Made by a program: the position numbers and the translations under genes. From positions 1 to 64,000 of IMG/VR virus record IMGVR_UViG_3300035181_000471: 64,000 nucleotides of DNA. One strand, written 5' to 3'. Under the pieces are notes generated by a model. The model had not been told where the DNA came from. It saw only the letters and a list, made by a program, of their open reading frames with translations, and searched no databases. Shown piece after piece: positions 53,755-64,000 of the stretch (the first letter of the stretch is position 1; every line of letters begins with the position of its first letter).

Positions 53755-53829
53755 TGGAGCCTAAGGAGGGAGTTGAACCCTCTTTCCATCCTTACCAAAG
53801 ATGTGTAATAGCCGTTATACTACAGAGGC
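53755..53829 (-). tRNA. tRNA-Thr(GGT), two acceptor mismatches
   Basis: Loop TT GGT AA; acceptor GCCTCTG/CTTAGGC. Confidence 0.8.
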
Positions 53830-53835
53830 ATTGAG

Positions 53836-53856
53836 GTGAGGGGACTGCCCCCTCAC
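53836..53856 (-). terminator. GC-rich hairpin after the Pth-like gene
   Basis: GTGAGGGG/CCCCTCAC. Confidence 0.5.
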
Positions 53857-53862
53857 TAGGGA

Positions 53863-54474
53863 TTACAGAAGTTCGAAGTTTCTGTGGTACCAGAAACCGT
53901 CTTGGAAAGTGTTCATAATGGCAACAGCGGTAATCTTGTTGTCCATGTCTGGCTCTCTCCAAATTGTTTTGTATTCGCCAGGACCAGTCTTCCCAGAGAG
54001 ATCTTTGCTACTGGCGTAAGGACTAGTGTCCTTTTTAGGAGTCATTAGGATGAGAGTCCCATTGGTCCAAGGAGCGAGTGGATGCTCCTTTTGAAACTGT
54101 GCGGCGGCGTGACTAGCCTGGACAACCTTTTGTGAGGTCGAGAGACTTGGATCGACAACGATGTAAAGCTTTTTGGCTCCAGGGTTGTTGAGGTAGGTCT
54201 TGAAGTGTTGAATCCCGGCCTGCATTGGGGCTAGAAGGGCCTTGTATTCTCTTTGCTTGCCTTCGGTATAGGGTAGGGTCTCACAAGGGCCTTTAGCCTT
54301 GTGTCCCGCTAATCCGCGAATCAGAGCGCGATGCTCACTGAGAGCGATATGGAGCATTCTGATTTCGGTTCTAAGGCCACCTTGCTTCTTGTGCTTTTCG
54401 ATAAGCAGTCTGAGCAAGAGTCTAGCGTTGAAGTAAGCTTCTTTTTGTTCCTGAGTGTAAGTGACATAAGCCAT
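53863..54474 (-). CDS. Pth2-like peptidyl-tRNA hydrolase with N-terminal extension
   Basis: KLYIVV...LS..Q...Q.SHA and WREPD....TAVA; start trimmed to MAYV. Confidence 0.72.
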   Translation of the reverse strand: MAYVTYTQEQKEAYFNARLLLRLLIEKHKKQGGLRTEIRMLHIALSEHRALIRGLAGHKAKGPCETLPYTEGKQREYKALLAPMQAGIQHFKTYLNNPGAKKLYIVVDPSLSTSQKVVQASHAAAQFQKEHPLAPWTNGTLILMTPKKDTSPYASSKDLSGKTGPGEYKTIWREPDMDNKITAVAIMNTFQDGFWYHRNFELL

Positions 54475-54551
54475 GTTTTTCTCCTTTAGAATGGTTGGCT
54501 GGTTTGTTAGCGGCAACTTCTAAGGATGGCTTATGGTGAGCGTGATGGCAC

Positions 54552-54575
54552 CTAGAGGTGATTTCTCCCGGTCAT
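54552..54575 (-). promoter_or_regulatory. uORF MTGRNHL-amber upstream of the Pth-like gene
   Basis: AAGGAG-N6-ATG, TAG stop; next in-frame stop TAA at 54531. Confidence 0.5.
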
Positions 54576-54602
54576 ATTATACTCCTTTATGGTTAAGTAA
54601 AA

Positions 54603-54680
54603 TGGTGCCCTCGGAGGAATTCGAATCCCCGATCAAGGTTTTAGAGACCCCAGCTTTAGGCCAGACTAAGCTACGAGGGC
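54603..54680 (-). tRNA. amber suppressor tRNA (anticodon CTA)
   Basis: Perfect acceptor GCCCTCG/CGAGGGC, A73, loop CT CTA AA, TTCGAAT, CCA. Confidence 0.88.
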
Positions 54681-54687
54681 TAGTAAC

Positions 54688-55050
54688 CTAGACTTCTGGG
54701 ATGATTAGAGGCTCAATCTGGCTTAGATCATTGGGAGTCAACTTGACATCACCAAAGGCGGCAAGAGGGAGTGGTTCGAAGGGGACTTCAATCTCAGTGG
54801 TTAGAAGCTCGGTCATTGCGGCGGTAAAACCAGGACCATCTTCAGGTGAAAAGACGAACTGGGTCTTGTCATCATTCAACACACCGTTGAACTTCTCAAT
54901 GAGCTTCTGTCTTTCCGTGTCGAAAGTAGCCATCTCAGCGATCAGCACCTTGGCTAAACGAGAGATCTGGTATGATGTCTTAGTAGGGAACACCTTGTCG
55001 TAAATGGTTGAACCTAGAATGGACTGAATTTCTTGAATCTTTAGCTTCAT
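54688..55050 (-). CDS. hypothetical phage protein (DUF1617-like)
   Basis: P.K.SY.ISRL.K....E...F..ER.KLI.K pattern. Confidence 0.6.
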   Translation of the reverse strand: MKLKIQEIQSILGSTIYDKVFPTKTSYQISRLAKVLIAEMATFDTERQKLIEKFNGVLNDDKTQFVFSPEDGPGFTAAMTELLTTEIEVPFEPLPLAAFGDVKLTPNDLSQIEPLIIPEV

Positions 55051-55075
55051 GTTAACTCCTAAAATATGATACTGC

Positions 55076-55573
55076 TTAAACTGGTCTTTCTGGTCTCATA
55101 CCTTTAAATTTCTCTGGGTATGTTTTCAAAAGGAATTTTCTGGTTTCGGCTTCTTGCTTAAGCGCGCTTTTTTCAAGAGTTCGATCTTTCCAAGGAAGGT
55201 CTTTCTCTTCGTCTACAATGGAGATAAATCTATCAACTCCAAAAACTATATATGCATCGAAGGCGTGGTCTAGTTCGTGAGCGATAATTGGTTCAAGTTT
55301 TTCACGCTTCAAATTGATCTCGTTCCAGTCGAAAGTAATCTCGGCTCTATCATGGAAAATGGCGGTCTGGGCTAGTGTGTTACCCTTTAAATCCCCGATC
55401 TTCCAAGTGATAGGCACGGGAATGGCCTTTAATCTGGCGTTATCAGCGGGTGATAGCTGAAGTAGAGTTTCTAAAGCGGTCTGAATTTGTTGCTGTGGAG
55501 TAGGCTGAGGCTTACAAGTCACTAAAAGAAGGACCGTAAGGGTCGCCAGACATAGCTTGCTGAGTGTGTGCAT
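55076..55573 (-). CDS. putative lipoprotein with HExxH motif
   Basis: LLVTC lipobox; IAHELDH...LE..A. Confidence 0.6.
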   Translation of the reverse strand: MHTLSKLCLATLTVLLLVTCKPQPTPQQQIQTALETLLQLSPADNARLKAIPVPITWKIGDLKGNTLAQTAIFHDRAEITFDWNEINLKREKLEPIIAHELDHAFDAYIVFGVDRFISIVDEEKDLPWKDRTLEKSALKQEAETRKFLLKTYPEKFKGMRPERPV

Positions 55574-55613
55574 ATGAGCCTCAACATAGAAATAGAAATT
55601 AGTTATTTTTTTT

Positions 55614-55699
55614 TGGCGGAAGCGATAGGAATTGAACCTACAACCCTGTTACGGGCGACAGTTTTCGAGACTGCTTGTCATGCCAGTGACCACGCTTCC
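55614..55699 (-). tRNA. tRNA-Ser(CGA)
   Basis: Loop CT CGA AA, long V arm, G73. Confidence 0.9.
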
Positions 55700-55705
55700 G
55701 TGATA

Positions 55706-55888
55706 TTGTGACTCCACCGGACACGGTATTTCGCGCCAACCTAGTCCGAATCGAACGGATTATAGCCCCGAAAAGCTCTTTGGTTCTCCCGTAAGGAGTC
55801 AAGGCGTGAATGGACTTAGGAGGTCTGAATCGCATCTTATAGCCGTCTGCTAAACTGCATCTATTCAGTTCGTTCGTTCAGGTCACAA
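55706..55888 (-). ncRNA. unknown structured RNA, about 183 nt
   Basis: Terminal TTGTGAC/GTCACAA helix, internal hairpins including TCCG-TTCGATT-CGGA; fills the tRNA spacer. Confidence 0.55.
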
Positions 55889-55890
55889 AT

Positions 55891-55964
55891 TGGAGCGGGA
55901 TAGGGGGCTTGAACCCCTGACACTAGCTCGGCAAGCTAAAGTTTTACCACTAAACTAATCCCGC
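55891..55964 (-). tRNA. tRNA-Gly(GCC)
   Basis: Loop TT GCC GA, U73. Confidence 0.9.
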
Positions 55965-55966
55965 AA

Positions 55967-56054
55967 TGGCGGAAGATAAGGGAATCGAACCCTTTAGGCT
56001 GTTATACCTTCACTTTAGCAAAGTGACGCACCTCTCCAACTGTGCCGATCTTCC
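55967..56054 (-). tRNA. tRNA-Ser(GCT)
   Basis: Loop TT GCT AA, long V arm. Confidence 0.9.
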
Positions 56055-56060
56055 ATGATT

Positions 56061-56138
56061 TGGTAATCCCAGCGGGATTTGAACCCGCATTCTCACCTTG
56101 AGAGGGTGGCGTCCTGGCCTGAGTTAGACGATGGGACT
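56061..56138 (-). tRNA. tRNA-Glu(CTC)
   Basis: Loop CT CTC AA. Confidence 0.88.
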
Positions 56139-56142
56139 GTCG

Positions 56143-56964
56143 TTACTGGTGTATCTTGTGTCGCCTATCATTAAAGGAGAACTCAATATACTCTACTTTC
56201 TGGTTACCAGTGAATTTAGTCTTGAATTGTTCAATATATTTATTAGCTTTGCCCTTTTTGACATATGCTATTGTAGTATGAGGCGCATAGTCAGGGAATG
56301 AATTGGCGTTATCTGGGTAGACTTCATTGCAATAATCGAATAAATCCTGGAGTTCTGGACTCTTTTCAACCTTTATAATGAGAACATCGTATGGTGCATC
56401 AGCGGGAGTGAACTGGCTTAAACCTAACCACTCAACCGACTTGACTTCTAGGCTTGGGTTGAACTTGTCTGGTGTTTGGTCCTTAATTCCGTAGAGACAA
56501 GTAATGTGGGGGTAGTCCTCTTTTCCCTTGATCTCTCCATCGGTGTAGACATCCTCTGGATCAACACTTTCAACGAACTCTAGAATTTTCTTAGTGACCT
56601 CTGGAGCGTAAGTCAACTGCACTGTGCTGTAGTCGTAAGCGGCTTGCTTTGTAAGGAGTCTGGCGAAAAAGGTTAGGAACCCCTTTTTACCACCTTGGCC
56701 GTAAGCTCTATCGTGATCGCCTTGAACACTAAGAATGAACAAAACTCCTTCATCAACCTTACACACGGCTCTTATTCCTTGGGATACTCGGATGGAAAGG
56801 AAGCCTGGGTTAGACTTAATTGGTTCTAAGTGGGTTCCTGCCCCATCTCTTAGCTGTTGTTCAGTGGCCTCAGTGACTTTAATCCTCAGAGCATCAAGAA
56901 GACGCTTTATATTCGGATTCTTTTTTGCCTGTTTAGTAGCGTCTTTTCCAAGTTCCATTTGCAT
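56143..56964 (-). CDS. RelE/HigB-like domain fused to a 2H phosphoesterase (Acb1/T4 57B-like)
   Basis: N: HLEP....GFLSIRV..GIRAV.......H..Y; C: PHITCLYG and FPDY.PHTTIAY. Confidence 0.8.
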   Translation of the reverse strand: MQMELGKDATKQAKKNPNIKRLLDALRIKVTEATEQQLRDGAGTHLEPIKSNPGFLSIRVSQGIRAVCKVDEGVLFILSVQGDHDRAYGQGGKKGFLTFFARLLTKQAAYDYSTVQLTYAPEVTKKILEFVESVDPEDVYTDGEIKGKEDYPHITCLYGIKDQTPDKFNPSLEVKSVEWLGLSQFTPADAPYDVLIIKVEKSPELQDLFDYCNEVYPDNANSFPDYAPHTTIAYVKKGKANKYIEQFKTKFTGNQKVEYIEFSFNDRRHKIHQ

Positions 56965-56975
56965 GTAAAGCCCTC

Positions 56976-57131
56976 TTATTCAGCGATGTAGCCAGCCTTG
57001 CGAAGAGCCTGCTTACCGCCAGCCTTGCGAAGAGCCTTGTAATCTTCGATTTCCTTGTTGTAACGAGCAACCTGCTCAGCGGTCAGAACGATCTCAGGCT
57101 CAGCGGTCTTCTTGTTCTTTTCGTTGGTCAT
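56976..57131 (-). CDS. small basic protein, 51 aa, with an ALRKAG duplication
   Basis: Promoter copy plus GGAGG RBS; 20-bp direct repeat. Confidence 0.65.
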   Translation of the reverse strand: MTNEKNKKTAEPEIVLTAEQVARYNKEIEDYKALRKAGGKQALRKAGYIAE

Positions 57132-57147
57132 GTGTCCCTCCACTATT

Positions 57148-57178
57148 ATTATACCAGAGTTAAGTTGATTCTCTTACT
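57148..57178 (-). promoter_or_regulatory. putative phage promoter (AGTAAGAGAA-N13-GGTATAAT)
   Basis: Copy of the recurring motif. Confidence 0.6.
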
Positions 57179-57190
57179 AGAATTGAGAAG

Positions 57191-57358
57191 TTATTTGTTC
57201 CTGTGGGTCTTTTTCTTTCTGACCCCATGCCTAGGTTTGCGGGAAGCATTTTCATTGCGATGCCACTTGCAGTAGGGGCAACTGGCTTCTAGTTCTTTAT
57301 GCCTTTTGGCCCAGACCGTAGAGTTTTCGGTAGTGTCTAGTTCATTTTTGGCTTTCAT
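57191..57358 (-). CDS. small basic Zn-finger-like protein, 55 aa
   Basis: AGGAG RBS; CPYC..H; K/R-rich tail. Confidence 0.6.
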   Translation of the reverse strand: MKAKNELDTTENSTVWAKRHKELEASCPYCKWHRNENASRKPRHGVRKKKTHRNK

Positions 57359-57374
57359 AAAGCTCCTGGAATAA

Positions 57375-57465
57375 TGGGTCCGTCCTAGGGGAGTCGAACC
57401 CCTTGTGCGTAAAATTACGCTGTGGTTTAAAAGACCACGGCCTGAACCGTGCGGCAAAGGACGGA
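57375..57465 (-). tRNA. atypical tRNA, anticodon TTT (Lys), long variable arm, 8-bp acceptor
   Basis: GTGGT-CT TTT AA-ACCAC; V arm GCGTAA/TTACGC; TCCGTCCT/AGGACGGA. Confidence 0.8.
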
Positions 57466-57486
57466 TAATGGTGCTATTTGTGTTTT

Positions 57487-57560
57487 TGGTAGCCACTTGC
57501 AGAATCGAACTGCAAACTCTTCCATGTCGAAGAAGCGGTATCCCACTTACCTAAGCGGCT
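57487..57560 (-). tRNA. tRNA-Val(GAC), C33
   Basis: Loop TC GAC AT. Confidence 0.8.
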
Positions 57561-57645
57561 ATTTTAATTCACTGGGTAGTTGCATTCACCCATCCGGTAG
57601 GGACACCTGTTTTCAAAATCCCGGCTTGTCAAGCTCCTTTAATAG

Positions 57646-57730
57646 TGGTGCGGATAGAGGGAGTCGAACCCCCATGCCGTTAGGCGCTGGCTTCTAAGAC
57701 CAGTTTGTCTACCAATTCCAACATACCCGC
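57646..57730 (-). tRNA. tRNA-Leu(TAG)
   Basis: Loop CT TAG AA, long V arm. Confidence 0.92.
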
Positions 57731-57736
57731 ATCGAA

Positions 57737-57811
57737 TGGAGCCTCTAAGGGGAATCGAACCCCTATCGTCTGATTACGAAACAGACATAATTGCCATTAT
57801 ACTACAGAGGC
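57737..57811 (-). tRNA. tRNA-Thr(CGT)
   Basis: Loop TT CGT AA; T31-T39 mismatch. Confidence 0.88.
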
Positions 57812-57841
57812 AAGAAGTAATTTAGTTGTCCAGTTAAATGT

Positions 57842-57917
57842 TGGTGTGACATGGGGGTTATGATCCCCCTCCGCGACTTTCACAGAGTCGTGTGCATCCG
57901 ATTACACCTATGTCACC
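57842..57917 (-). tRNA. tRNA-His(GTG) with non-canonical T loop
   Basis: Loop CT GTG AA; encoded G-1 opposite A73; T loop ATCATAA. Confidence 0.8.
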
Positions 57918-57959
57918 GTCTGGGGAATGAAGGACCACCTGTCCTAAATTCCGATTCTA

Positions 57960-58038
57960 TGGCGGTTCGTACGGGATTTGAACCCGTGATCTTTTGCGTG
58001 ACAGGCAAATGGGGACGGCCAGACTCCCCTAACGAACC
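57960..58038 (-). tRNA. tRNA-Asp(GTC)
   Basis: Loop CT GTC AC, G73. Confidence 0.9.
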
Positions 58039-58040
58039 AT

Positions 58041-58117
58041 TGGTACCCCCGGTAGGACTCAAACCTACATAATTCACCGTGTAAAGATGATGCCTAATCT
58101 CTCGGCGTCACAGGGGC
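58041..58117 (-). tRNA. tRNA-Val(TAC)
   Basis: Loop TT TAC AC. Confidence 0.85.
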
Positions 58118-58125
58118 ATTGATGT

Positions 58126-58201
58126 TGGAGCCGAATATCAGAATTGAACTGATCTCTCTGCGTTACAAGGGCAGAATAATTATCCACTATACTAATCCGG
58201 C
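58126..58201 (-). tRNA. tRNA-Thr(TGT)
   Basis: Loop CT TGT AA; C31-C39 mismatch. Confidence 0.85.
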
Positions 58202-58208
58202 ATGATAT

Positions 58209-58279
58209 TGGAAGGGCTGTAGGGAATCGAACCCTATCTGTTCGCTTCAAAGGCGAATCTGTCATCCTGTCTCAACCCT
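58209..58279 (-). tRNA. tRNA-Gln(TTG) with degenerate D arm
   Basis: TTCGC-CT TTG AA-GCGAA, good T arm, no clear D stem. Confidence 0.7.
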
Positions 58280-58280
58280 A

Positions 58281-58378
58281 TGGTTTCACACCTGAGCCGT
58301 CAAGCCCCAATCTCCCTAGCCCATCAAGCCGTATGGAAGACAATCGCTAGACTGATGAGATCCGTGCGATAGTGTGAA
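58281..58378 (-). ncRNA. CCA-ended tRNA-like RNA without an anticodon arm
   Basis: TTCACAC/GTGTGAA plus ACCA; nested helices ATCTC/GAGAT, CTAGC/GCTAG, CCAT/ATGG. Confidence 0.6.
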
Positions 58379-58460
58379 TGGCTCTCCATGTAGGAATCGA
58401 ACCTACTTAGCTTGCGCGACTGGTTAACAGCCAGTTACCGACCCGGACAGTATATGGAGA
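58379..58460 (-). tRNA. atypical tRNA-Asn(GTT) with extended variable arm
   Basis: ACTGG-CT GTT AA-CCAGT; V region with GC-GCAA-GC. Confidence 0.78.
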
Positions 58461-58525
58461 ATGAATTTCTTAGATAGTGGCCGTTGATCCACTTACGCTC
58501 TGTCGCTCAGTGCAGAGTATCTGTT

Positions 58526-58601
58526 TGGTGCCTCAGATGGGAGTCGAACCCACAACCAATAGAGTAAGAGTCTACTGCTCGACCAATTGAGCTTCTGAAG
58601 C
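58526..58601 (-). tRNA. tRNA-Lys(CTT)
   Basis: Loop CT CTT AC, conventional fold. Confidence 0.88.
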
Positions 58602-58671
58602 ATAAATACAGCACCCGGCACACTGGCTCTTTTACGCATACGCGACCTGTAGCCTGACGGTGTTGTGATTT

Positions 58672-58733
58672 TGGTGGATACAGTGGGTATTGAACCCACC
58701 TAGGGAGCTACCCTACTCGCCTTGAGTGTACCC
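58672..58733 (-). ncRNA. 62-nt mini-tRNA with Ala identity
   Basis: GGGTACA/TGTATCC (G3.U70), A73, CCA, T arm TTCAATA, 5-nt loop TAGCT. Confidence 0.7.
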
Positions 58734-58738
58734 ATGAT

Positions 58739-58825
58739 CGGTGATCCCAAGGGGAGTCGAACCCCTACAGTCGAGGACGCCTGGGTAAGAGCCAGGGGTG
58801 GTAGCCAGTTGCCACTATTGGGACC
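58739..58825 (-). tRNA. atypical tRNA, anticodon CTT (Lys), long V arm, foldable as 8/4, no encoded CCA
   Basis: CCTGG-CT CTT AC-CCAGG; V arm GTC/GAC; GGTCCCAA/TTGGGATC; ends ACCG. Confidence 0.75.
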
Positions 58826-58902
58826 GTAATTTGCGGCTCTAGGAACCCATCTTCCTAAATTTGATCCTGTCATGCAGGAACCGCCTATTTTTAAAGTTGC
58901 CA

Positions 58903-59259
58903 CTATTTCCAGAGTTTAAAGTTGGTAATTTCATCTTCCGCATTGGAAAGAGCATCCTCAAGGGAGGAGACTTCGGTTTCAAGATGAGAGATACGGCCTT
59001 CAAGAACTGAGAGAACTATTGCAAGACGCTCGGAAACCGTTCCATTCCAAATACCTGGAGTGTCGGGGAACATCCCACAGAGGGGGAGAATCAAGTCACT
59101 GCACTTGGTAAAGTCAGCGTAGACGGCATCTACTTCGTCCAGGGCGACCATTGCTTCCTTGGTGAAGAGTAGCATCTCGTTGGACTCAGGGTCAAAACGA
59201 GTGAGATCCTTGATGTTCTCATCAAGAGCTTCTCGGATCAGTGCAAGCTTTTCGGACAT
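58903..59259 (-). CDS. hypothetical protein
   Basis: Promoter copy plus GGAGG; start trimmed to MSEK. Confidence 0.65.
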   Translation of the reverse strand: MSEKLALIREALDENIKDLTRFDPESNEMLLFTKEAMVALDEVDAVYADFTKCSDLILPLCGMFPDTPGIWNGTVSERLAIVLSVLEGRISHLETEVSSLEDALSNAEDEITNFKLWK

Positions 59260-59275
59260 GAGTGCCTCCATAGTT

Positions 59276-59306
59276 ATTATACTCGGAAGCTTCGTGTTTT
59301 CTTACT
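59276..59306 (-). promoter_or_regulatory. putative phage promoter (AGTAAGAAAA-N13-AGTATAAT)
   Basis: Same boxes and spacing as the copy at 1555. Confidence 0.65.
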
Positions 59307-59313
59307 GTTTATT

Positions 59314-59387
59314 TGGTGGAGCCGGGGAGAATCGAACTCCCGATATCTGGATGCAAACCAGAGGTTATCCCTCTTAACTACGACCCC
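59314..59387 (-). tRNA. tRNA-Ala(TGC)
   Basis: Loop TT TGC AT, G3.U70. Confidence 0.9.
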
Positions 59388-59392
59388 AAAGC

Positions 59393-59473
59393 TAGACACA
59401 TTGTTGGCATTCTTTGAAGAGGAACACGCCAAGACTCTTGTTCAGGGGTTATGGGTTGCTGTTGATGTGTCTA
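59393..59473 (-). ncRNA. ACAGCAAC hairpin element, copy A
   Basis: TAGACACAT/ATGTGTCTA closing stem then CAACAGCAAC. Confidence 0.55.
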
Positions 59474-59499
59474 AGGGCTTAAGCACTACACTTAGGCTT

Positions 59500-59573
59500 T
59501 GGAGCGGGTTACGAGATTCGAACTCGTTTCGACAGCTTGGAAGGCTGAGGCACAACCCATATACCAAACCCGC
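59500..59573 (-). tRNA. tRNA-Gly(TCC)
   Basis: Loop CT TCC AA. Confidence 0.9.
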
Positions 59574-59583
59574 TTAGGCTACT

Positions 59584-60282
59584 TCACTTCTTAATACTCA
59601 ACTTATCAAGCTCTCGATGAAGAGCTTTCAACTTTTTTGCGACTGCTGGAGCTTCCTCTTCCATAGTGTGTTCATGCCACTCTTGGCTAGGACTACTGTG
59701 TGAGTTAGTATTAAGATCCCACCACTTCTCAAGCTCGTCGATTTTAGCTTTAATTTTTTCGATCTTGTCTTTTCGAACCTCAGGGAATTCTTGGAAGGTG
59801 ATGGCGTAATCGTCCTTGTCACCCACATAGGTTCTTCCAAAGTTTACCCAGTTCTCAACATTTCTGAGTTCTTTGTAGTGTTGACCCCAGATGTAGTCTA
59901 CACCCAGCTTCTCAGGGATGGATCTTAGTTGTCTTCCTGCTCCGTAAGCACGGTATTCAGGTAGAACAAAGATTGCAACACCTTTGATACCAGTCTTGTT
60001 TTCCAAGCCGTGGACGCCTAGCTCAACTAAATCAGAGGCGGGTTTCTTCTCTTTCTTCAAGAAGTAGCCACCAATAATCTGTCCATCAGCAAGCGCAACA
60101 TAACAATTACTGAAGTTATTGCCCATTTCTTCTTTGATTTCAGTCTTTACATCCTCTTCTGATAGCCCTAAGGACTCTTTAAAGGACTTAAAACAGACAT
60201 TTAAAGCTTCAGCTACTTCGCTACGCTTCATCTTTCTGATCTGGATATCAAAGGCTGTCTTGGTGAGTAAGGTGGAAATCAT
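59584..60282 (-). CDS. GNAT-family acetyltransferase
   Basis: YVA..DGQIIG, IFVLPEYRAYGAGRQL motif A; start trimmed to MISTLL. Confidence 0.82.
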   Translation of the reverse strand: MISTLLTKTAFDIQIRKMKRSEVAEALNVCFKSFKESLGLSEEDVKTEIKEEMGNNFSNCYVALADGQIIGGYFLKKEKKPASDLVELGVHGLENKTGIKGVAIFVLPEYRAYGAGRQLRSIPEKLGVDYIWGQHYKELRNVENWVNFGRTYVGDKDDYAITFQEFPEVRKDKIEKIKAKIDELEKWWDLNTNSHSSPSQEWHEHTMEEEAPAVAKKLKALHRELDKLSIKK

Positions 60283-60319
60283 TGTGTTCTCTCTATTGAG
60301 AAATAGAAAGTTAAAAGAT

Positions 60320-60396
60320 TGGTAGTCCCAACGGGATTCGAACCCGTGATAGCCACATTGAAAGTGTGGTGCCTTAAGCCGCTTGGCTATGAGACT
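60320..60396 (-). tRNA. tRNA-Glu(TTC)
   Basis: Loop CT TTC AA. Confidence 0.9.
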
Positions 60397-60405
60397 ACGA
60401 ATTTG

Positions 60406-60505
60406 ATCATCTGGATGGAGTCGAACCATCGGCCACCCGGAGTCCCCTGCAATTTGGTCCTTAACCGTGAGAGGTGGTGCGCTCTGACCGCTGAGCTACA
60501 AATGA
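60406..60505 (-). ncRNA. tRNA-like RNA with expanded anticodon domain
   Basis: Canonical acceptor, D and T arms; about 50 nt between D and T arms; no CCA. Confidence 0.65.
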
Positions 60506-60506
60506 T

Positions 60507-60586
60507 TGGTGTCCGTGGTCGGATTCGAACCGACAGTCACGACCTTCTGAGGATCGTTGCGTTGCCAGAGATTAGCATACACGGAC
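60507..60586 (-). tRNA. tRNA-Leu(CAG) with short variable loop
   Basis: Loop CT CAG AA; V loop TGACT. Confidence 0.85.
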
Positions 60587-60591
60587 ATGAT

Positions 60592-60665
60592 TGGCGAGAG
60601 TGCCAGGGGTCAAACCGGGGCCAAAGATTTTGGAGACCTTCATGCTATCGTAACACCTCACTCCC
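60592..60665 (-). tRNA. tRNA-Trp(CCA), second copy, irregular T arm
   Basis: Loop CT CCA AA; T loop TTTGACC. Confidence 0.72.
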
Positions 60666-60754
60666 ATGAGTAAATTTTGCAGAGTTATTGGCATATCTGC
60701 AACCTCCTTATGCAAAACCTACTGCGATCCCTACTGGGATTCTAGGTGGAGTAT

Positions 60755-60831
60755 TGGTCGGCCACAAGTGATTCGAACACTTGACCCCTTGCTCCCGAAG
60801 CAAGTGCGCTACCAGACTGCGCCAGTGGCCG
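60755..60831 (-). tRNA. tRNA-Pro(CGG)
   Basis: Loop TT CGG GA. Confidence 0.92.
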
Positions 60832-60841
60832 TTAATTTTAT

Positions 60842-60928
60842 TGGTCGGTGTGACAGGAATCGAACCTGCGTTTGTCCCTAATGGACCTAGCACCCCAAGC
60901 TAGTGGTCAACCATTGACCCACACACCG
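60842..60928 (-). tRNA. atypical tRNA-Pro(GGG) with long variable arm
   Basis: Loop TT GGG GT; V arm GTCC-ATTAG-GGAC. Confidence 0.85.
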
Positions 60929-60957
60929 AATTTCGTAACTCTGAATGAAATTTGAAT

Positions 60958-61032
60958 TGGTCGGGGTGAGAGGAATTGAACCTCCTACTACTCCCATCCA
61001 AAGAGAGGCGTCTACCGATGACTTACACCCCG
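60958..61032 (-). tRNA. tRNA-Pro(TGG)
   Basis: Loop TT TGG AT. Confidence 0.85.
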
Positions 61033-61144
61033 GTATTTTTAAGATGAATGGGGACTTTTTAGTCTTTGGATTAGTTTTAGACCATCCACATTCACAACAC
61101 ACTGGCCCATGTTTTTTAATGAGCAAAGTTCTTTCATAGTTCAA
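61033..61144 (-). pseudogene. truncated HNH-endonuclease remnant
   Basis: R..LI.KHG..C.ECGW...NP.T.K.P resembles the segment preceding an HNH core; the frame runs into tRNA-Pro. Confidence 0.55.
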
Positions 61145-61154
61145 CCTACTTTAT

Positions 61155-61229
61155 TGGTAGCCCTACCTGGGATCGAACCAGAATCTAACGATTATCGGTC
61201 GTTTGCACTAGCCATTGTGCTATAGGGCC
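61155..61229 (-). tRNA. tRNA-Ile(GAT), C33
   Basis: Loop CC GAT AA. Confidence 0.85.
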
Positions 61230-61278
61230 AATTTGGAGGCGGTCCCTCCAGCAAAGAGGGCGCTTATCCGGCGTTGGC

Positions 61279-61354
61279 TGGTGGAGCCATCGGGAGTTCA
61301 ACCCGATCCACTAGACTGCGAAACTAGTATGCCACGCCTCAACACTTTGGCCCC
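61279..61354 (-). tRNA. tRNA-Ala(CGC)
   Basis: Loop TT CGC AG, G3.U70, T31-T39 mismatch. Confidence 0.8.
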
Positions 61355-61356
61355 AT

Positions 61357-61432
61357 TGGAGCGTCTGACCGGACTTGAACCGGCTCCCTGAGTTTGGAAG
61401 ACTCTAGTGCTACCATTAAACACCACAGACGC
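61357..61432 (-). tRNA. tRNA-Gly(TCC), second copy
   Basis: Loop CT TCC AA. Confidence 0.88.
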
Positions 61433-61440
61433 ATTGAAAT

Positions 61441-61516
61441 TGGTGGATCTGACAGGGATCGAACCTGCCACCTACTGGATGCAAACCAGTCGCTCTCCCA
61501 AATGAGCTACAGACCC
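61441..61516 (-). tRNA. tRNA-Ala(TGC), second copy
   Basis: Loop TT TGC AT, G3.U70. Confidence 0.92.
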
Positions 61517-61531
61517 GTGTTTGTCTCTTAT

Positions 61532-61610
61532 TGGTGCAGGTAACGGGAGTCGAACCCGCAAAAACACAGCCTTCTCAGAACTGCCGCAATACCAAATAGC
61601 GTATACCTGC
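61532..61610 (-). tRNA. tRNA-Leu(GAG) with short variable loop
   Basis: Loop CT GAG AA; V loop TGTTTTT. Confidence 0.83.
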
Positions 61611-61617
61611 ATAGATA

Positions 61618-61696
61618 CAAGACTCTCTTTTTTCAAGGCAGGATTACCTGCGGCATCCCCATTAACAGGAGAATTTTGGTTGCTGTAAGAGTCTTG
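61618..61696 (-). ncRNA. ACAGCAAC hairpin element, copy B
   Basis: CAAGACTCT/AGAGTCTTG stem then TACAGCAAC; two inner hairpins. Confidence 0.6.
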
Positions 61697-61770
61697 GTGC
61701 CTTAGGTTGGAGTTGAACCAACCACACAAGGATTTTCAGTCCTTTGCTCTACCACCTGAGCTACTAAGGC
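61695..61770 (-). tRNA. tRNA-Phe(GAA)
   Basis: Loop CT GAA AA. Confidence 0.93.
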
Positions 61771-61848
61771 ATGATAAAAATTTGCGAGTGTGACTTACAT
61801 TGACTCCCAAGGTCACACAGACTGTAAGCCTACCTTTTTTCACAAAAT

Positions 61849-61927
61849 TGGTGGAGGATACCGGAATCGAACCGATTTCTATTCCTTTTCAGGGAATCGC
61901 TGGAATGACCACACTAGCTCACCCTCC
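61849..61927 (-). tRNA. tRNA-Phe(GAA), second copy
   Basis: Loop CT GAA AA; large D loop. Confidence 0.82.
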
Positions 61928-61944
61928 ATGATATTTAGATGAAT

Positions 61945-62029
61945 TGGTGGAACATGATGGGAATCGAACCCATAACCTCTGCACGGCATTGCGCCCAAAC
62001 AGTGTGCTTACCAAAGCCACTTCAGCCCC
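61945..62029 (-). ncRNA. tRNA-like RNA with Ala-type acceptor and elongated anticodon arm
   Basis: GGGGCTG acceptor with bulge, G3.U70, ACCA, good T arm; no 7-nt anticodon loop. Confidence 0.65.
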
Positions 62030-62035
62030 ATATAT

Positions 62036-62110
62036 TGGTGGAGCTACGGGGAGTCGAACCCCGAACTTTTGGATGCCGTCCAAATGTGTTCCCGCTAGCA
62101 CTATAGCCCC
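62036..62110 (-). tRNA. tRNA-Ala(GGC), C33
   Basis: Loop AC GGC AT, G3.U70. Confidence 0.85.
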
Positions 62111-62117
62111 ATGATGC

Positions 62118-62191
62118 TGGCTCCAAAAAGGGGAATCGAACCCCTGTCTCTGACTTAACAGGTCAGCATCCTACCATTGGATGATTTTGGA
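62118..62191 (-). tRNA. tRNA-Asn(GTT), conventional
   Basis: Loop CT GTT AA, G73. Confidence 0.9.
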
Positions 62192-62270
62192 ATAGTAAGG
62201 TCTCTCCCTTGTCAAGCCTGGATGATTAGCGGCTTTCCCTCCGAGGTTGGGTTGGACAGTGAATCGTTTT

Positions 62271-62981
62271 TTAGATTGCCTTCACTATCTCATTCGCCTG
62301 ATTTTTACAAACCCAGGTGTCCAACTTTTTAAGGACTAATTGTCCATGATCAAATTCCCAATGACAGTTGGGGCAAAGACCAACCAGATTATCGGGGGCA
62401 TTGATTTCTTTCAGTGTAGCGGAATCTGGGAAACTCATTACTGCTTGAATATGGCAGACCTCCACATGCTTACTATACCCACAATTAAAACAAGAATCGG
62501 TCTTGTGGCAAACACTAGCTATTCTTTGAGCGTGTTTTGTTATAACAGACCTAGCTCTCTGCCAATTAGTGCCACCGGATTCAGATTTCCCAAATAACTC
62601 TAACTTTGTTACATGGTCTCTTTTCCCTTTTAGGGGGTCTTTCTCTGCTTTAATCTTAACTACTTTTTCCTTTTTAGGTCTAAGTTTGTTATTGTAAGAG
62701 GCCGCGCAAGAGGTGGAACAGAAAATCCCGCTTTTAGTCTGAGATGGGACTCTGTGAAACTGCTTGGAACAGTTAAAACAAGAGACCTCTAATCGAGTTA
62801 TGTTATGATCGTGAAAGCATCGTTGGGAGCAGAATAATTTGATTTGCCCTCGTCTTTTCGATATAATTAAGTTGGCCTTAGATTGAGTGGTCTCTTTCCC
62901 ACACTGCTCACAAACTACAGGAATGCGATCTTTGTATTTCTTGTCCTTATATTCGATCAGCAGCGTTTCTAGTTGAGTCAT
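62271..62981 (-). CDS. HNH homing endonuclease with N-terminal Zn ribbons
   Basis: CxxC/FCSxxC repeats; C..CGY...EVCHI...N..NL..LCPNCH. Confidence 0.88.
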   Translation of the reverse strand: MTQLETLLIEYKDKKYKDRIPVVCEQCGKETTQSKANLIISKRRGQIKLFCSQRCFHDHNITRLEVSCFNCSKQFHRVPSQTKSGIFCSTSCAASYNNKLRPKKEKVVKIKAEKDPLKGKRDHVTKLELFGKSESGGTNWQRARSVITKHAQRIASVCHKTDSCFNCGYSKHVEVCHIQAVMSFPDSATLKEINAPDNLVGLCPNCHWEFDHGQLVLKKLDTWVCKNQANEIVKAI

Positions 62982-63020
62982 AATTTCTCCCTCTATAATC
63001 AAGAGTTAGAAAGTCGATTT

Positions 63021-63097
63021 TGGTTGCGGGAGGTGGAATCGAACCACGCTTTCACTATGAGCTTATGAGACTCTAGGCCAACCTCTGGCCCCGCTAT
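63021..63097 (-). tRNA. tRNA(CAT), initiator-like 1:72 mismatch, irregular
   Basis: Loop CT CAT AA; A1/A72; lacks the three GC pairs of initiators. Confidence 0.68.
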
Positions 63098-63105
63098 AAT
63101 TTTAT

Positions 63106-63180
63106 TGGTCCTCCAGGCAGGAATTGAACCCGCACTTCATGGTTCGAAGCCATGTGTTCTATCCGTTATACTACTGGAAG
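63106..63180 (-). tRNA. tRNA-Arg(TCG)
   Basis: Loop CT TCG AA. Confidence 0.88.
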
Positions 63181-63189
63181 ATAATTTCT

Positions 63190-63307
63190 CGGCCTTGGGG
63201 TTGTGGCCCCTCGCTTGCGTCTGACTCCCTGCCATCAGTCAGAACCGTGTATAGAGCCGCTAAGTCTTCCTACCTACTCCATACGGAGAGGGGCTCTCTT
63301 GTGCGGC
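63190..63307 (-). ncRNA. candidate structured RNA, about 120 nt
   Basis: On the + strand: GGGG/CCCC, TCTGACT/AGTCAGA, AGAGCC/GGCTCT enclosing CTCC-ATAC-GGAG. Confidence 0.45.
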
Positions 63308-63308
63308 A

Positions 63309-63396
63309 TGGCGGAAGATACAGGAATCGAACCTGCTTGCCTTTGACAGCCCATGCTTTCCAGGCATGTGTGACGCTCCTACTTCACCGATCTTCC
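63309..63396 (-). tRNA. tRNA-Ser(GGA)
   Basis: Loop CT GGA AA, long V arm. Confidence 0.9.
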
Positions 63397-63525
63397 ATTC
63401 TATACTAGATACTGAAAGTTTTTCAATATCGTTTGGTGGTAATTTTAGAATTATTTTTTGTAAACAACTCAGACCTTTGCTCTTATTATCGGGCGGTCCG
63501 GCGAGAACCAATCTTCGTCTTTATG

Positions 63526-63603
63526 TGGCGAGGCATAGGGGATTCGAACCCCTGATCTCTTCGTAGACAGCGAAGCGGGAACTCCGGACTTCCCCAATAC
63601 CCC
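63526..63603 (-). tRNA. tRNA-Asp(GTC), second copy
   Basis: Loop CT GTC TA, G73. Confidence 0.87.
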
Positions 63604-63611
63604 ATGATAAT

Positions 63612-63686
63612 TGGTGCCAACAAAGGGATTCGAACCCTTGACAAGAAGCTTATGAGACTTCCCCCTCACCTTTCGGGCTTGCTGGC
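63612..63686 (-). tRNA. tRNA(CAT), elongator Met or Ile2
   Basis: Loop CT CAT AA. Confidence 0.82.
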
Positions 63687-63745
63687 AAAGTGAGAGTTTT
63701 TAACTACCCAGTGGCTCTCACACTGGTCCTGGCCGTCCAAGTCAT

Positions 63746-63832
63746 TGGTACTCCTGACAGGATTCGAACCTGCGTTGGGCTTTCGCCGCACGGTTTCGTA
63801 GACCGTTACTAATCCATCTCAGTTACAGGAGC
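63746..63832 (-). tRNA. atypical tRNA-Arg(ACG) with long variable arm
   Basis: Loop CT ACG AA; V arm GGC-GAAA-GCC. Confidence 0.85.
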
Positions 63833-63840
63833 ATAGAATC

Positions 63841-63898
63841 AAGACTCGTCTTTTAGTTTCATCTTAAGTGAAAGGTTTTTAGTTGCTGTGAGAGTCTT
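63841..63898 (-). ncRNA. ACAGCAAC hairpin element, copy C
   Basis: AAGACTC/GAGTCTT stem, CACAGCAAC, inner TTTCA-CTTAAGA-TGAAA. Confidence 0.6.
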
Positions 63899-63992
63899 TG
63901 GTGACGCATGTAGGAATCGAACCTACTCAGGGCTTACTTGTGTGCCAACGGTTTTACAGACCGCCTCCGCTCTCCTACTCGGACGATGCGCC
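63899..63992 (-). tRNA. tRNA-Tyr(GTA)
   Basis: Loop CT GTA AA, long V arm, A73. Confidence 0.9.
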
Positions 63993-64000
63993 ATAGACGA

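What the first reader, a model, noticed from the sequence alone, without database searches (positions are those of the whole stretch)
57375..63832. Systematic swap of variable-arm class across the tRNA set
Seen: five tRNAs with class-I anticodons carry base-paired extended V arms (Lys-UUU 57375, Asn-GUU 58379, Lys-CUU 58739, Pro-GGG 60842, Arg-ACG 63746), while two Leu tRNAs lack one (CAG 60507, GAG 61532). Normal Asn-GUU and Lys-CUU copies coexist. Known: in bacteria long V arms are confined to Ser, Leu, Tyr and Sec and are SerRS identity elements; PrrC and PARIS AriB cut tRNA-Lys(UUU). Inference: either shape-altered tRNAs that evade host tRNA nucleases or toxins, or mis-acylated tRNAs that cause programmed mistranslation.
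Basis: partly seen in the sequence, partly recalled or inferred. Interest (0 to 1): 0.82.

Follow-up and report, generated by a model that had tools for sequence, protein, structure and literature searches.

The report
Phage tRNAs with swapped variable arms
A giant phage carries lysine, asparagine, proline and arginine tRNAs with an extra small hairpin arm, and leucine tRNAs that lack theirs; they still look like correctly charged tRNAs, the trait recurs in related and unrelated phages, and it may help the tRNAs escape bacterial tRNA-cutting defences.

Summary
The window starts a 221-kb jumbo-phage record with about 47 tRNA(-like) genes on the minus strand. Five tRNAs with class-I anticodons fold into five-armed cloverleaves with a hairpin in the variable (V) region. 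Leu-CAG and Leu-GAG have only 5-7 V nucleotides.

The trait is not private to this phage. In 16 related genomes, including the cultured Tunturiibacter phage Tunturi_5, 41 of 397 class-I-anticodon tRNAs have V of 9 nt or more, and 9 of 44 Ser/Leu/Tyr-anticodon tRNAs have short V regions. Unrelated Pseudomonas phages (Milchi, phiPsa374) show the same thing. T5 does not.

The odd tRNAs keep the 1:72 pair and discriminator of their cognate isoacceptors. Their V hairpins are mostly 3 bp with a GNRA tetraloop and 3-4 unpaired 3' nucleotides, unlike the Ser arms of these phages. They are usually the phage's only decoder for that anticodon. AAA encodes essential Walker-A lysines.

Programmed mistranslation is therefore unlikely. 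The best reading is cognate, working tRNAs with a remodelled V region. Escape from tRNA-targeting host defences is the leading driver but is untested. I found no published description.

The parts
53655..64000 (-). Dense tRNA array of a jumbo phage. It runs on to 64191 in the full record and holds about 47 tRNA or tRNA-like genes, nearly all with an encoded CCA.
   Evidence: ARAGORN finds 36 genes in the window and 37 in the record. Rfam adds seven more. My own parser confirms them. Portal and terminase lie upstream.
57375..57465 (-). tRNA-Lys(UUU) with a 5-bp V hairpin (GCGUA-AUUU-UACGC) and a 3-bp D stem. It is the only UUU-anticodon tRNA in the record.
   Evidence: Relatives with a different but still paired V stem occur in G003, G001 and Tunturi_5.
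58379..58460 (-). tRNA-Asn(GUU) with a 12-nt V region (GC-GCAA-GC), U1:A72 and G73. It is a second copy beside a normal Asn-GUU.
   Evidence: Long-V Asn-GUU also occurs in G006, G012, G013, G020, Milchi and phiPsa374.
58739..58825 (-). tRNA-Lys(CUU) with a 13-nt V region (GUC-CUC-GAC). The 3' end is CCG, there are three nucleotides between the acceptor and D stems, and the Rfam score is borderline. It may be decaying in this genome.
   Evidence: (28.9 bits against a gathering score of 29). Better-formed counterparts occur in G003, G004 and G006.
60842..60928 (-). tRNA-Pro(GGG) with a 4-bp V hairpin (GUCC-AUUAG-GGAC), C1:G72, A73 and a 3-bp D stem. It is the only GGG-anticodon tRNA in the record.
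   Evidence: (54.9 bits). A strain-variant contig concentrates its changes in the V arm, including a compensatory G:C to A:U pair.
63746..63832 (-). tRNA-Arg(ACG) with a GGC-GAAA-GCC V hairpin, G1.U72 and A73. It is the only ACG-anticodon tRNA in the record.
   Evidence: (49.6 bits). 87-nt counterparts occur in G003, G004 and G013.
60507..60586 (-). tRNA-Leu(CAG) with a 5-nt V loop, A73 and a long D loop.
   Evidence: Rfam 47.7 bits, own parser, fold. Short-V Leu-CAG also occurs in G003, G004, G006 and Tunturi_5.
61532..61610 (-). tRNA-Leu(GAG) with a 6-7-nt V loop and A73.
   Evidence: The Leu-GAG of G003 and G004 keeps a long arm.
57646..57730 (-). tRNA-Leu(UAG), an ordinary class II tRNA (V: GCC-UAAC-GGC plus 2 nt). 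Used for comparison.
62118..62191 (-). Normal 74-nt tRNA-Asn(GUU), coexisting with the long-V copy.
   Evidence: (67.2 bits).
58526..58601 (-). Normal 76-nt tRNA-Lys(CUU), coexisting with the long-V copy.
   Evidence: (61.8 bits).

Best explanation
These are genuine phage tRNA genes that still carry the amino acid their anticodon specifies. Their variable region has been remodelled.

In some class-I tRNAs (here Lys-UUU, Lys-CUU, Asn-GUU, Pro-GGG and Arg-ACG) a short, stable hairpin has been added. It is typically 0-2 nt, then 3 bp, a GNRA or UUCG tetraloop, and 3-4 unpaired nt. It is often accompanied by a class-II-like 3-bp D stem. In some Leu tRNAs the arm has been removed.

Host synthetases would still charge these tRNAs through the anticodon, the 1:72 pair and the discriminator. 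LeuRS would use A73 and the tRNA core. The arm is too short and sits at the wrong angle to look like a Ser arm.

The most likely benefit is a changed outline of the tRNA core. Host tRNA-targeting defence nucleases or toxins that deplete host tRNAs during infection would then fail to bind or cut the phage's replacement copies.

Shown here: the anatomy, conservation across a phage clade, retained cognate identity marks, and no codon reassignment.
Inferred: charging by cognate synthetases (about 0.8) and the defence-evasion benefit (about 0.4).
For: Structure:
- The five-armed fold is the minimum-energy fold for all five tRNAs.
- Across 41 such tRNAs the mean V stem is 3.22 bp, against 2.70 +/- 0.12 bp in shuffles; none of 2000 shuffles reached the observed value.
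- All four Watson-Crick pair types occur at each stem position.
- The V stems of the four Lys-UUU-long tRNAs (window, G003, G001, Tunturi_5) differ in sequence but all pair: GCGUA/UACGC, CGA/UCG, UUCC/GGAA, GGAC/GUCU.
- A natural strain variant of Pro-GGG-long changes G:C to A:U in the V stem.
- D stems of 3 bp or fewer occur in 26/41 odd tRNAs against 85/356 normal class-I tRNAs, p = 6e-7.

Conservation:
- 41/397 class-I-anticodon tRNAs in 16 genomes with terminase identity of 42-100% carry the arm.
- Tunturi_5's only Lys-UUU has a GGAC-UUCG-GUCU arm, and its Leu-CAG and Leu-UAA are short.
- Milchi and phiPsa374 have long-V Asn-GUU. phiPsa374 also has two short-V Leu tRNAs.

Cognate identity:
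- Pro keeps C1:G72/A73, Asn U1:A72/G73, Gln U1:A72, Thr G1:C72/U73, Cys U73 and Trp A1:U72/G73, each matching its normal isoacceptors.
- Anticodon loops, the G18G19 dinucleotide and T loops are canonical, and CCA is encoded in 4 of 5.
- 29 of 41 are the only phage-encoded tRNA with that anticodon in the regions examined.

Genetic code:
- The terminase Walker-A lysine (K123) is AAA. Walker-A-motif lysines use AAA 7 times and AAG 7 times.
- Conserved K, R, P, N and L columns use the codons these tRNAs read.
- Those codons make up roughly 19% of all codons.

Not Ser-like:
- Ser arms are 4-7 bp with one unpaired 3' nt (two in 2 of 16). Odd arms have 3 or more unpaired 3' nt in 31/40 against 0/16 for Ser, p = 5e-8.
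- In yeast tRNA-Leu, lengthening a UUCG-capped V stem by one pair confers Ser acceptance (PMC9976931).

Defence context:
- Retron-Eco7 and Septu cut the V loop of tRNA-Tyr, and T5 tRNA-Tyr resists through its V loop (PMC13096335).
- PARIS, PrrC and a bacterial Schlafen act on tRNA-Lys(UUU).
- E. coli LeuRS does not need the V arm.
- Streptomyces coelicolor LeuRS charges a natural type I tRNA-Leu.
- Tunturi_5 has RtcB and a CCA-adding enzyme inside its tRNA region.
Against: - No expression, maturation, charging or cleavage data exist. No RNA run holding the phage was found.
- The host of this phage and its defence systems are unknown.
- The 221-kb record is about 77% complete and has no RtcB or CCA-adding enzyme.
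- Known anticodon nucleases read mainly the anticodon loop, so it is unclear how a V arm would protect Lys, Asn, Arg or Pro tRNAs.
- Class II synthetases such as LysRS and AsnRS approach from the V-loop side (my own knowledge), so an arm could hinder charging.
- Which isoacceptor carries the arm varies between close relatives. This fits drift as well as an arms race.
- The hairpins are short. Two of the five in this window are marginal, and Lys-CUU-long may be a decaying gene.
- The counts across genomes are not phylogenetically independent. G003 and G004 share many tRNAs.
Confidence: 0.4

Rival explanations
1. Neutral or purely structural remodelling. The V loop is the most permissive part of a tRNA. 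Small, very stable tetraloop hairpins arise by slippage or recombination within arrays and persist because host synthetases and ribosomes tolerate them. They might add folding stability to fast-made, under-modified phage tRNAs. Loss of the Leu arm is tolerated because LeuRS ignores it. No interaction with host defence is involved.
For: - Arms come and go between close relatives. Pro-GGG is long here but 77 nt in G003 and G004. Pro-UGG is long only in G004. Ile-GAU and Gln-CUG are long in G003 and G004 but not here.
- The hairpins are minimal, GNRA- or UUCG-capped and thermodynamically optimal.
- The arms of G003 Arg-ACG and Ile-GAU share the same ACGUAACAGU sequence and similar T arms, which suggests copying within the array.
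- E. coli LeuRS does not need the arm.
Against: - The arm on Lys-UUU persists across phages whose terminases are only 45% identical, with compensatory changes.
- The D stem is co-adapted.
- The distribution over amino acids is strongly non-random: 32/159 for Asn, Lys, Ile, Thr, Gln and Pro against 0/113 for Gly, Val, His, Asp, Phe and Met. This grouping was chosen after seeing the data.
- Same-anticodon pairs of long and normal copies are retained in 12 cases.
- The trait arose independently in Pseudomonas phages.
Confidence: 0.3
2. The hairpin is a handle for a protein other than a defence nuclease. It could mark phage tRNAs as 'self' for phage-encoded repair, CCA-adding or modification enzymes. 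It could also keep them away from a host modification or quality-control enzyme that reads positions 44-48.
For: - GNRA tetraloops are common protein- and RNA-docking motifs (my own knowledge).
- Tunturi_5 encodes a CCA-adding enzyme and RtcB among its tRNAs.
- The array here holds a GNAT and a 2H-phosphoesterase-like ORF.
- The arm has a uniform geometry: 1 nt, 3 bp, tetraloop, 3 nt.
Against: - V-stem sequences and loops are not conserved.
- This record lacks RtcB and a CCA-adding enzyme.
- No candidate binding protein co-occurs consistently in the loci examined.
Confidence: 0.1
3. They do not work in translation. They are decoys or sponges for host tRNA-binding toxins, regulators, or decaying pseudogenes.
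For: - Lys-CUU-long ends in CCG, has an irregular acceptor/D junction and scores just under the Rfam threshold.
- Asn-long and Lys-CUU-long duplicate normal copies.
- The annotators' note on phiPsa374's long Asn reads 'tRNA-Pseudo-GTT'.
- Many allo-tRNAs appear inactive in translation (PMC5389517).
Against: - 29 of 41 are the sole phage copy for their anticodon. In the complete G003 genome both Lys tRNAs, the only Ile-GAU and the only Cys are long-V.
- Anticodon loops, D loops, T loops and CCA are canonical.
- Structure-preserving substitutions occur.
Confidence: 0.1
4. They are mis-acylated tRNAs, charged with Ser, Leu or Tyr through the arm while carrying other anticodons. The result would be programmed mistranslation or recoding.
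For: - The long arm is the main Ser identity element and the anticodon is ignored by SerRS.
- nev-tRNAs and some allo-tRNAs do exactly this (PMC3333845, PMC5389517).
- Asn-long has G73.
- The Pseudomonas-phage Asn-long has a Leu-like D arm.
Against: - Cognate acceptor and discriminator marks are retained.
- No odd tRNA has G1:C72, G2:C71 and G73 together.
- Arm geometry is unlike the Ser arms.
- Nearest neighbours are never Ser, Leu or Tyr tRNAs.
- AAA sits at catalytic lysines, and the affected codons are about 19% of all codons.
- No class II synthetase (PF00587, PF00152) was found in the record.
Confidence: 0.05

Closest known systems
allo-tRNAs and irregular tRNA polycistrons of Acidobacteria and other bacteria (Mukai et al. 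2017, PMC5389517)
   Same: They are bacterial or phage tRNAs with a long V arm and anticodons for many non-Ser/Leu/Tyr codons. They are reported from Acidobacteria, the host phylum of the nearest cultured relative, Tunturi_5.
   Different: allo-tRNAs are defined by an 8/4 or 9/3 acceptor/T branch and serine identity on one scaffold. The tRNAs here are 7/5 (Lys-UUU possibly 8/5), lack the Ser marks, and follow the acceptor features of their own anticodon family.
nev-tRNAs of nematodes (PMC3333845, PMC4300185)
   Same: They have a class II architecture with class-I anticodons (Gly-CCC, Ile-UAU).
   Different: nev-tRNAs have Leu-type arms and are charged with leucine. They are weakly expressed and read rare codons. 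The phage tRNAs have their own arm geometry, keep cognate marks, and read common codons, often as the sole phage copy.
Type I (short-V) tRNA-Leu of Streptomyces coelicolor (PMC6614811) and arm-less E. coli tRNA-Leu variants (PMC9976931)
   Same: They are Leu tRNAs without the long arm that are nevertheless charged by a bacterial LeuRS. This is a direct precedent for Leu-CAG and Leu-GAG here.
   Different: That case is a single bacterial isoacceptor with a co-adapted LeuRS domain. Here the short-V Leu tRNAs are phage-encoded, recur in several phage groups, and coexist with a normal Leu-UAG.
Phage tRNAs that escape tRNA-targeting defences: T5 tRNA-Tyr against Retron-Eco7/Septu, T5 tRNA-Lys against PARIS, and mycobacteriophage anticodon-loop variants (PMC11555353, PMC13096335, PMC10264068)
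   Same: A phage-encoded isoacceptor differs from the host tRNA at a site a nuclease reads. For tRNA-Tyr that site is the variable loop itself. tRNA-Lys(UUU) is a recurrent target.
   Different: The known cases are base changes within the same tRNA class. Here whole arms are gained or lost, and resistance has not been tested.
tRNA-Sec (Rfam RF01852)
   Same: Lys-UUU-long can be drawn with an 8-bp acceptor stem plus a long V arm, and Rfam's Sec model is its best match.
   Different: The score is 43 bits, below the gathering score of 47. The anticodon is UUU, not UCA. The D stem is 3 bp, not 6. The discriminator is not G73. Its relatives have plain 7-bp acceptors with A73.

Membership tests
allo-tRNA (Mukai 2017) | 12-bp acceptor branch arranged 8/4 or 9/3 | tested here: not met
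   ARAGORN and my own parser give 7/5 for Asn, Lys-CUU, Pro and Arg. Lys-UUU is 8/5 or 7/5, and an 8/4 drawing leaves a mismatch.
allo-tRNA (Mukai 2017) | Serine identity marks (G73, Ser-type acceptor pairs) on a long-V scaffold, whatever the anticodon | tested here: not met
   Discriminators are A, A, A, C/A and G. No odd tRNA in 16 genomes has G1:C72, G2:C71 and G73 together.
allo-tRNA (Mukai 2017) | Base-paired long variable arm | tested here: met
tRNA-Sec | Match to the family model at its gathering score, UCA anticodon, 13-bp acceptor branch with a 6-bp D stem | tested here: not met
   43 bits against 47. Anticodon UUU. 3-bp D stem.
nev-tRNA-like mis-acylated class II tRNA | V arm and body like a Leu or Ser tRNA of the same genome | tested here: not met
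   Arm geometry differs from Ser (p = 5e-8). Nearest body neighbours are never Ser, Leu or Tyr.
nev-tRNA-like mis-acylated class II tRNA | Charged with an amino acid other than the one the anticodon specifies | not testable with these tools
   Indirect evidence only: there is no sign of codon reassignment.
Type I tRNA-Leu | Leu anticodon, short V loop (4-7 nt), otherwise Leu-like body with A73 | tested here: met
   Leu-CAG has V 5 nt and Leu-GAG V 6-7 nt, both with A73. G003's Leu-CAG groups with other Leu tRNAs.
Type I tRNA-Leu | Leucylated by the host LeuRS | not testable with these tools
   Precedents exist only in E. coli and S. coelicolor.
Phage anti-defence tRNA (T5 tRNA-Tyr / tRNA-Lys type) | Phage-encoded isoacceptor of a tRNA that defence nucleases target | tested here: inconclusive
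   Lys-UUU is a known target elsewhere. The host and its defences are unknown here.
Phage anti-defence tRNA (T5 tRNA-Tyr / tRNA-Lys type) | Resists cleavage that destroys the host counterpart and rescues infection | not testable with these tools
   Needs cleavage and plating assays.

The most novel reading that the evidence does not exclude
Switching tRNA architectural class is a general and overlooked phage counter-defence strategy. A small tetraloop hairpin is added to the V region of class-I tRNAs, or the arm of Leu tRNAs is deleted, while cognate charging is kept. This makes phage-encoded tRNAs invisible to host nucleases and toxins that read tRNA shape. The strategy has evolved repeatedly in unrelated phages of Acidobacteriota, Pseudomonas and other hosts.
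Probability: 0.3. Interest if true: 0.85.

Novelty: new variant of a known kind. Interest (0 to 1): 0.66.

Why it matters
Textbooks and reviews state that the long variable arm belongs to Ser, Leu, bacterial Tyr and Sec tRNAs. The known exceptions, allo-tRNAs and nev-tRNAs, are mis-charging or inactive oddities.

Here a whole clade of giant phages, and at least two groups of cultured Pseudomonas phages, carry apparently cognate Lys, Asn, Thr, Gln, Pro, Arg, Ile and Cys tRNAs with a compact extra arm, alongside Leu tRNAs without one. The annotators' note on one of these genes reads 'pseudo'.

If they work, three things follow:
- Many bacterial synthetases, EF-Tu and the ribosome accept an arm on class-I tRNAs.
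- A new kind of structural variation becomes available for the phage-host conflict over tRNAs.
- The hairpins offer natural designs for orthogonal or tagged tRNAs.

Because cultured phage-host pairs have the trait (Tunturi_5, Milchi, phiPsa374), the question can be tested directly.

Tried and rejected
- Close relatives by DNA in GenBank phages: none found.
- Single-protein searches of IMG/VR with two ORFs from the array: nothing.
- An exact DNA pattern for Lys-UUU-long in IMG/VR: nothing.
- 'Relatives' are not defined for a virus record.
- The single scan of bacterial genomes with the terminase profile gave only a mis-binned fragment and two distant prophage-like hits. I therefore obtained no host genome and could not ask whether host tRNAs share the trait.
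- Sequencing-run search: only DNA runs hold the phage, so expression could not be examined.
- tRNA-Sec and allo-tRNA readings of Lys-UUU-long: considered and rejected.
- A class II tRNA with a mutated anticodon: rejected from neighbour analysis and acceptor marks.
- Codon reassignment: rejected.
- Phage-encoded synthetases matched to the odd tRNAs: PF00587 and PF00152 are absent. The class I synthetase families were not searched.
- Assembly artefact: rejected.
- tRNAscan-SE isotype models were not available.

Full report
**What the window is.** The window is the first 64 kb of a single 221,217-bp virus record, 47% G+C and about 77% complete by CheckV. It encodes a portal and a large terminase.

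From 53.6 to 64.2 kb the minus strand is a dense tRNA array. ARAGORN finds 37 genes. Rfam adds seven more, including Leu-CAG, Met-CAU, Val-UAC, Gln-UUG, Ala-CGC and a second Trp. Almost all encode CCA.

The terminase has hundreds of metagenomic relatives on contigs of 100-460 kb. The nearest cultured relative is the 309-kb Tunturiibacter phage Tunturi_5, at 45.5% identity, which infects an acidobacterium (PMC11924767). The window's own phage is found in sediment and microbial-mat metagenomes.

**Checking the observation.** All five tRNAs exist at the stated coordinates. Each folds, both by ARAGORN's rules and as the unconstrained minimum-energy structure, into a cloverleaf with a fifth arm.

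| tRNA | V hairpin |
|---|---|
| Lys-UUU | GCGUA-AUUU-UACGC |
| Pro-GGG | GUCC-AUUAG-GGAC |
| Arg-ACG | GGC-GAAA-GCC |
| Lys-CUU | GUC-CUC-GAC |
| Asn-GUU | GC-GCAA-GC |

Pro-GGG and Arg-ACG are solid Rfam tRNAs at 54.9 and 49.6 bits. The other three fall at or below threshold. Lys-UUU scores best against the Sec model, at 43 bits against a gathering score of 47.

Leu-CAG (60507-60586) and Leu-GAG (61532-61610) have V regions of 5 and 6-7 nt and fold as four-armed cloverleaves. Leu-UAG, three Ser tRNAs and Tyr keep normal arms. Normal Asn-GUU and Lys-CUU copies coexist with the long ones.

Contigs from four independent runs reproduce the genes exactly. 'Systematic' is too strong a word, and Lys-CUU-long may be decaying: it has a CCG end, an irregular junction and a score of 28.9 bits.

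**The trait is lineage-wide.** I fetched tRNA regions from 15 related genomes: ten IMG/VR records with terminase identity of 42-63%, two further IMG/VR records and one ENA contig at 71-81%, one record at 36% CheckV completeness, and Tunturi_5. I parsed 460 ARAGORN tRNAs in all.
- 41 of 397 tRNAs with class-I anticodons have a V region of 9 nt or more.
- 9 of 44 with Ser, Leu or Tyr anticodons have fewer than 9 nt. These are mostly Leu-CAG, Leu-CAA and Leu-UAA.
- Arg-ACG is 87 nt in the window, G003, G004 and G013.
- Lys-UUU is long in the window, G003, G001/G002 and Tunturi_5.
- Lys-CUU is long in the window, G003, G004 and G006.
- Short Leu-CAG occurs in the window, G003, G004, G006 and Tunturi_5.
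- Other carriers vary between relatives: Thr-UGU, Gln-CUG, Ile-GAU, Pro-UGG, Cys-GCA and Trp-CCA.

Two unrelated groups of Pseudomonas phages show the same thing. Milchi has an 87-nt Asn-GUU with a UCC-GAAA-GGA arm beside a normal copy. Sixteen records of phiPsa374-like phages hold a homologue.

Phage T5 serves as a control. All of its class-I tRNAs are 71-78 nt.

**Anatomy of the added arm.**
- The arms share one plan: 0-2 unpaired nt, a stem of mostly 3 bp, a tetraloop, then 3-4 unpaired nt. Of 40 loops, 16 are GNRA (12 of them GAAA) and one is UUCG.
- Mean stem length is 3.22 bp, against 2.70 +/- 0.12 bp in shuffles. None of 2000 shuffles reached the observed value.
- Stem sequences differ freely while pairing is kept.
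- A natural strain variant of Pro-GGG-long has its differences concentrated in the arm, with a compensatory G:C to A:U change.
- The Ser arms of the same phages are 4-7 bp followed by one unpaired nt (two in 2 of 16). Leu arms mostly leave two unpaired and Tyr arms two or three. The difference from Ser is strong: p = 5e-8 for unpaired 3' nt and p = 2e-6 for stem length.
- Long-V class-I tRNAs are enriched for class-II-like D stems of 3 bp or fewer: 26/41 against 85/356, p = 6e-7.
- These p-values ignore relatedness among the genomes.

**Whose identity do they carry?**
- The first pair and discriminator of the odd tRNAs follow their anticodon family. Pro has C1:G72/A73, Asn U1:A72/G73, Gln U1:A72, Thr G1:C72/U73, Cys U73, Trp A1:U72/G73 and Arg G.U/A.
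- None combines the Ser marks G1:C72, G2:C71 and G73.
- With the anticodon and V region removed, their nearest neighbours are cognate isoacceptors or noise. They are never Ser, Leu or Tyr tRNAs.
- 29 of 41 are the only phage tRNA for that anticodon in the regions examined. In the complete G003 genome both Lys tRNAs, the only Ile-GAU and the only Cys are long-V.

**No recoding.**
- The terminase Walker-A lysine is AAA, and Walker-A-motif lysines genome-wide use AAA and AAG equally.
- Conserved K, R, P, N and L columns use the codons these tRNAs read.
- Those codons make up about a fifth of all codons.
- No class II synthetase of families PF00587 or PF00152 is encoded in the record.

The mistranslation reading is therefore unlikely.

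**How it most likely works.** Cognate synthetases that rely on the anticodon and acceptor end should still charge these tRNAs.

For Leu there is direct precedent. E. coli LeuRS needs A73 and the tRNA core, not the arm, and Streptomyces coelicolor naturally uses a short-V tRNA-Leu.

A 3-bp tetraloop-capped arm followed by 3-4 unpaired nt is not what SerRS sees in these phages' Ser tRNAs. In yeast tRNA-Leu, lengthening a UUCG-capped V stem by one pair is what creates Ser acceptance.

Why remodel at all? The best lead comes from the tRNA conflict literature.
[quoted passage not shown] T5's tRNA-Tyr resists because of its distinctive variable loop.
- PARIS, PrrC and a bacterial Schlafen act on tRNA-Lys(UUU), and phages answer with variant tRNAs.
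- A Leu tRNA with no arm offers nothing to an enzyme that cuts arms. An added arm could block enzymes that dock on the core.
- Tunturi_5 has RtcB and a CCA-adding enzyme among its tRNAs, which suggests that tRNA damage matters in this clade.

This part is inference. A neutral or stabilising role remains a serious rival. So does a role as a handle for another factor. The strongly uneven distribution over amino acids has no explanation yet: Asn, Lys, Ile, Thr, Gln and Pro carry arms, while Gly, Val, His, Asp, Phe and Met never do.

**Comparison and novelty.** The tRNAs fail the defining tests for allo-tRNAs (8/4 or 9/3 branch, Ser identity), for tRNA-Sec, and for nev-tRNA-like mis-charging scaffolds. 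The short Leu tRNAs meet the sequence definition of type I tRNA-Leu.

Seven full-text searches found no description of cognate-looking long-V class-I tRNAs in phages or bacteria. A review lists V-arm tRNAs with class-I anticodons only in nematodes. The Tunturi_5 paper counts its 43 tRNAs without comment.

I rate this a new variant of a known kind: structurally altered phage tRNAs. It is testable in cultured systems.

Noticed in passing
window 54603-54680 (-); also window 12462-12464 and G000 137247-137249: An amber-suppressor-type tRNA (anticodon CUA, Rfam 55.4 bits) lies in the array, and CUA tRNAs recur in relatives. TAG ends 14 of 117 long ORFs. In two places a TAG is followed by a long in-frame ORF: a 265-aa ORF then a 412-aa ORF at 11214-13259, and a 455-aa ORF then a 483-aa open frame near 137 kb. 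These could be read-through or just adjacent genes.
   Followed up: partly
window 60406-60505 (-): A tRNA-like element of about 100 nt (Rfam tRNA 40.7 bits) has normal D and T arms, about 35 nt between the strands of the anticodon stem, and a TCAAA 3' end. ARAGORN's intron mode calls it Val-CAC. Elements of similar size occur in G001, G003, G011 and G016. T5 has 100-144-nt 'tRNA-like stable RNAs' in its tRNA region.
   Followed up: partly
window 63021-63095, 61945-62029, 58674-58733 (-): Further tRNA-like sequences with good T arms and CCA ends were called by neither ARAGORN nor Rfam at threshold. One has a CAU anticodon loop. Two give weak tmRNA-family hits.
   Followed up: no
window 56143-56964, 59584-60282, 62271-62981 (-): Three protein genes lie inside the array: a 2H-phosphoesterase / Acb1-like ORF (sub-threshold Pfam hits), a GNAT acetyltransferase, and an HNH endonuclease with zinc fingers. 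Tunturi_5 has RtcB, a CCA-adding enzyme and HNH genes in the same setting.
   Followed up: partly
L080:7147-7220 (G003): A 74-nt tRNA has the Ser anticodon UGA but only 3 V nucleotides, with A1:U72 and G73. A bacterial SerRS should not recognise a Ser anticodon on a class-I body, so this is a candidate for a real mismatch between anticodon and identity.
   Followed up: no
L113 (phiPsa374, KJ409772.2) 2994-3080, 782-858, 3749-3825; L109 (Milchi) 24511-24597: Cultured Pseudomonas phages carry an 87-nt Asn-GUU with a hairpin V arm and a Leu-like D arm. phiPsa374 also has two Leu tRNAs with 4-5-nt V loops.
   Followed up: partly
terminase homologues P0004, P0013-P0017 and others: Many terminase homologues in the clade are about 1000 aa with LAGLIDADG or Hint Pfam hits. 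They probably carry inteins, which the window's 618-aa terminase lacks.
   Followed up: no
G000, whole record: AGA is the commonest Arg codon (41% of Arg), yet no tRNA-Arg(UCU) was found in the 221-kb record. No Cys tRNA was found either. The record is about 77% complete.
   Followed up: no
L080 1095-1181 and 4401-4487 (G003): Arg-ACG-long and Ile-GAU-long of one genome share the same V-arm sequence (ACGUAACAGU) and near-identical T arms. This suggests that arms are copied between tRNA genes within an array.
   Followed up: no
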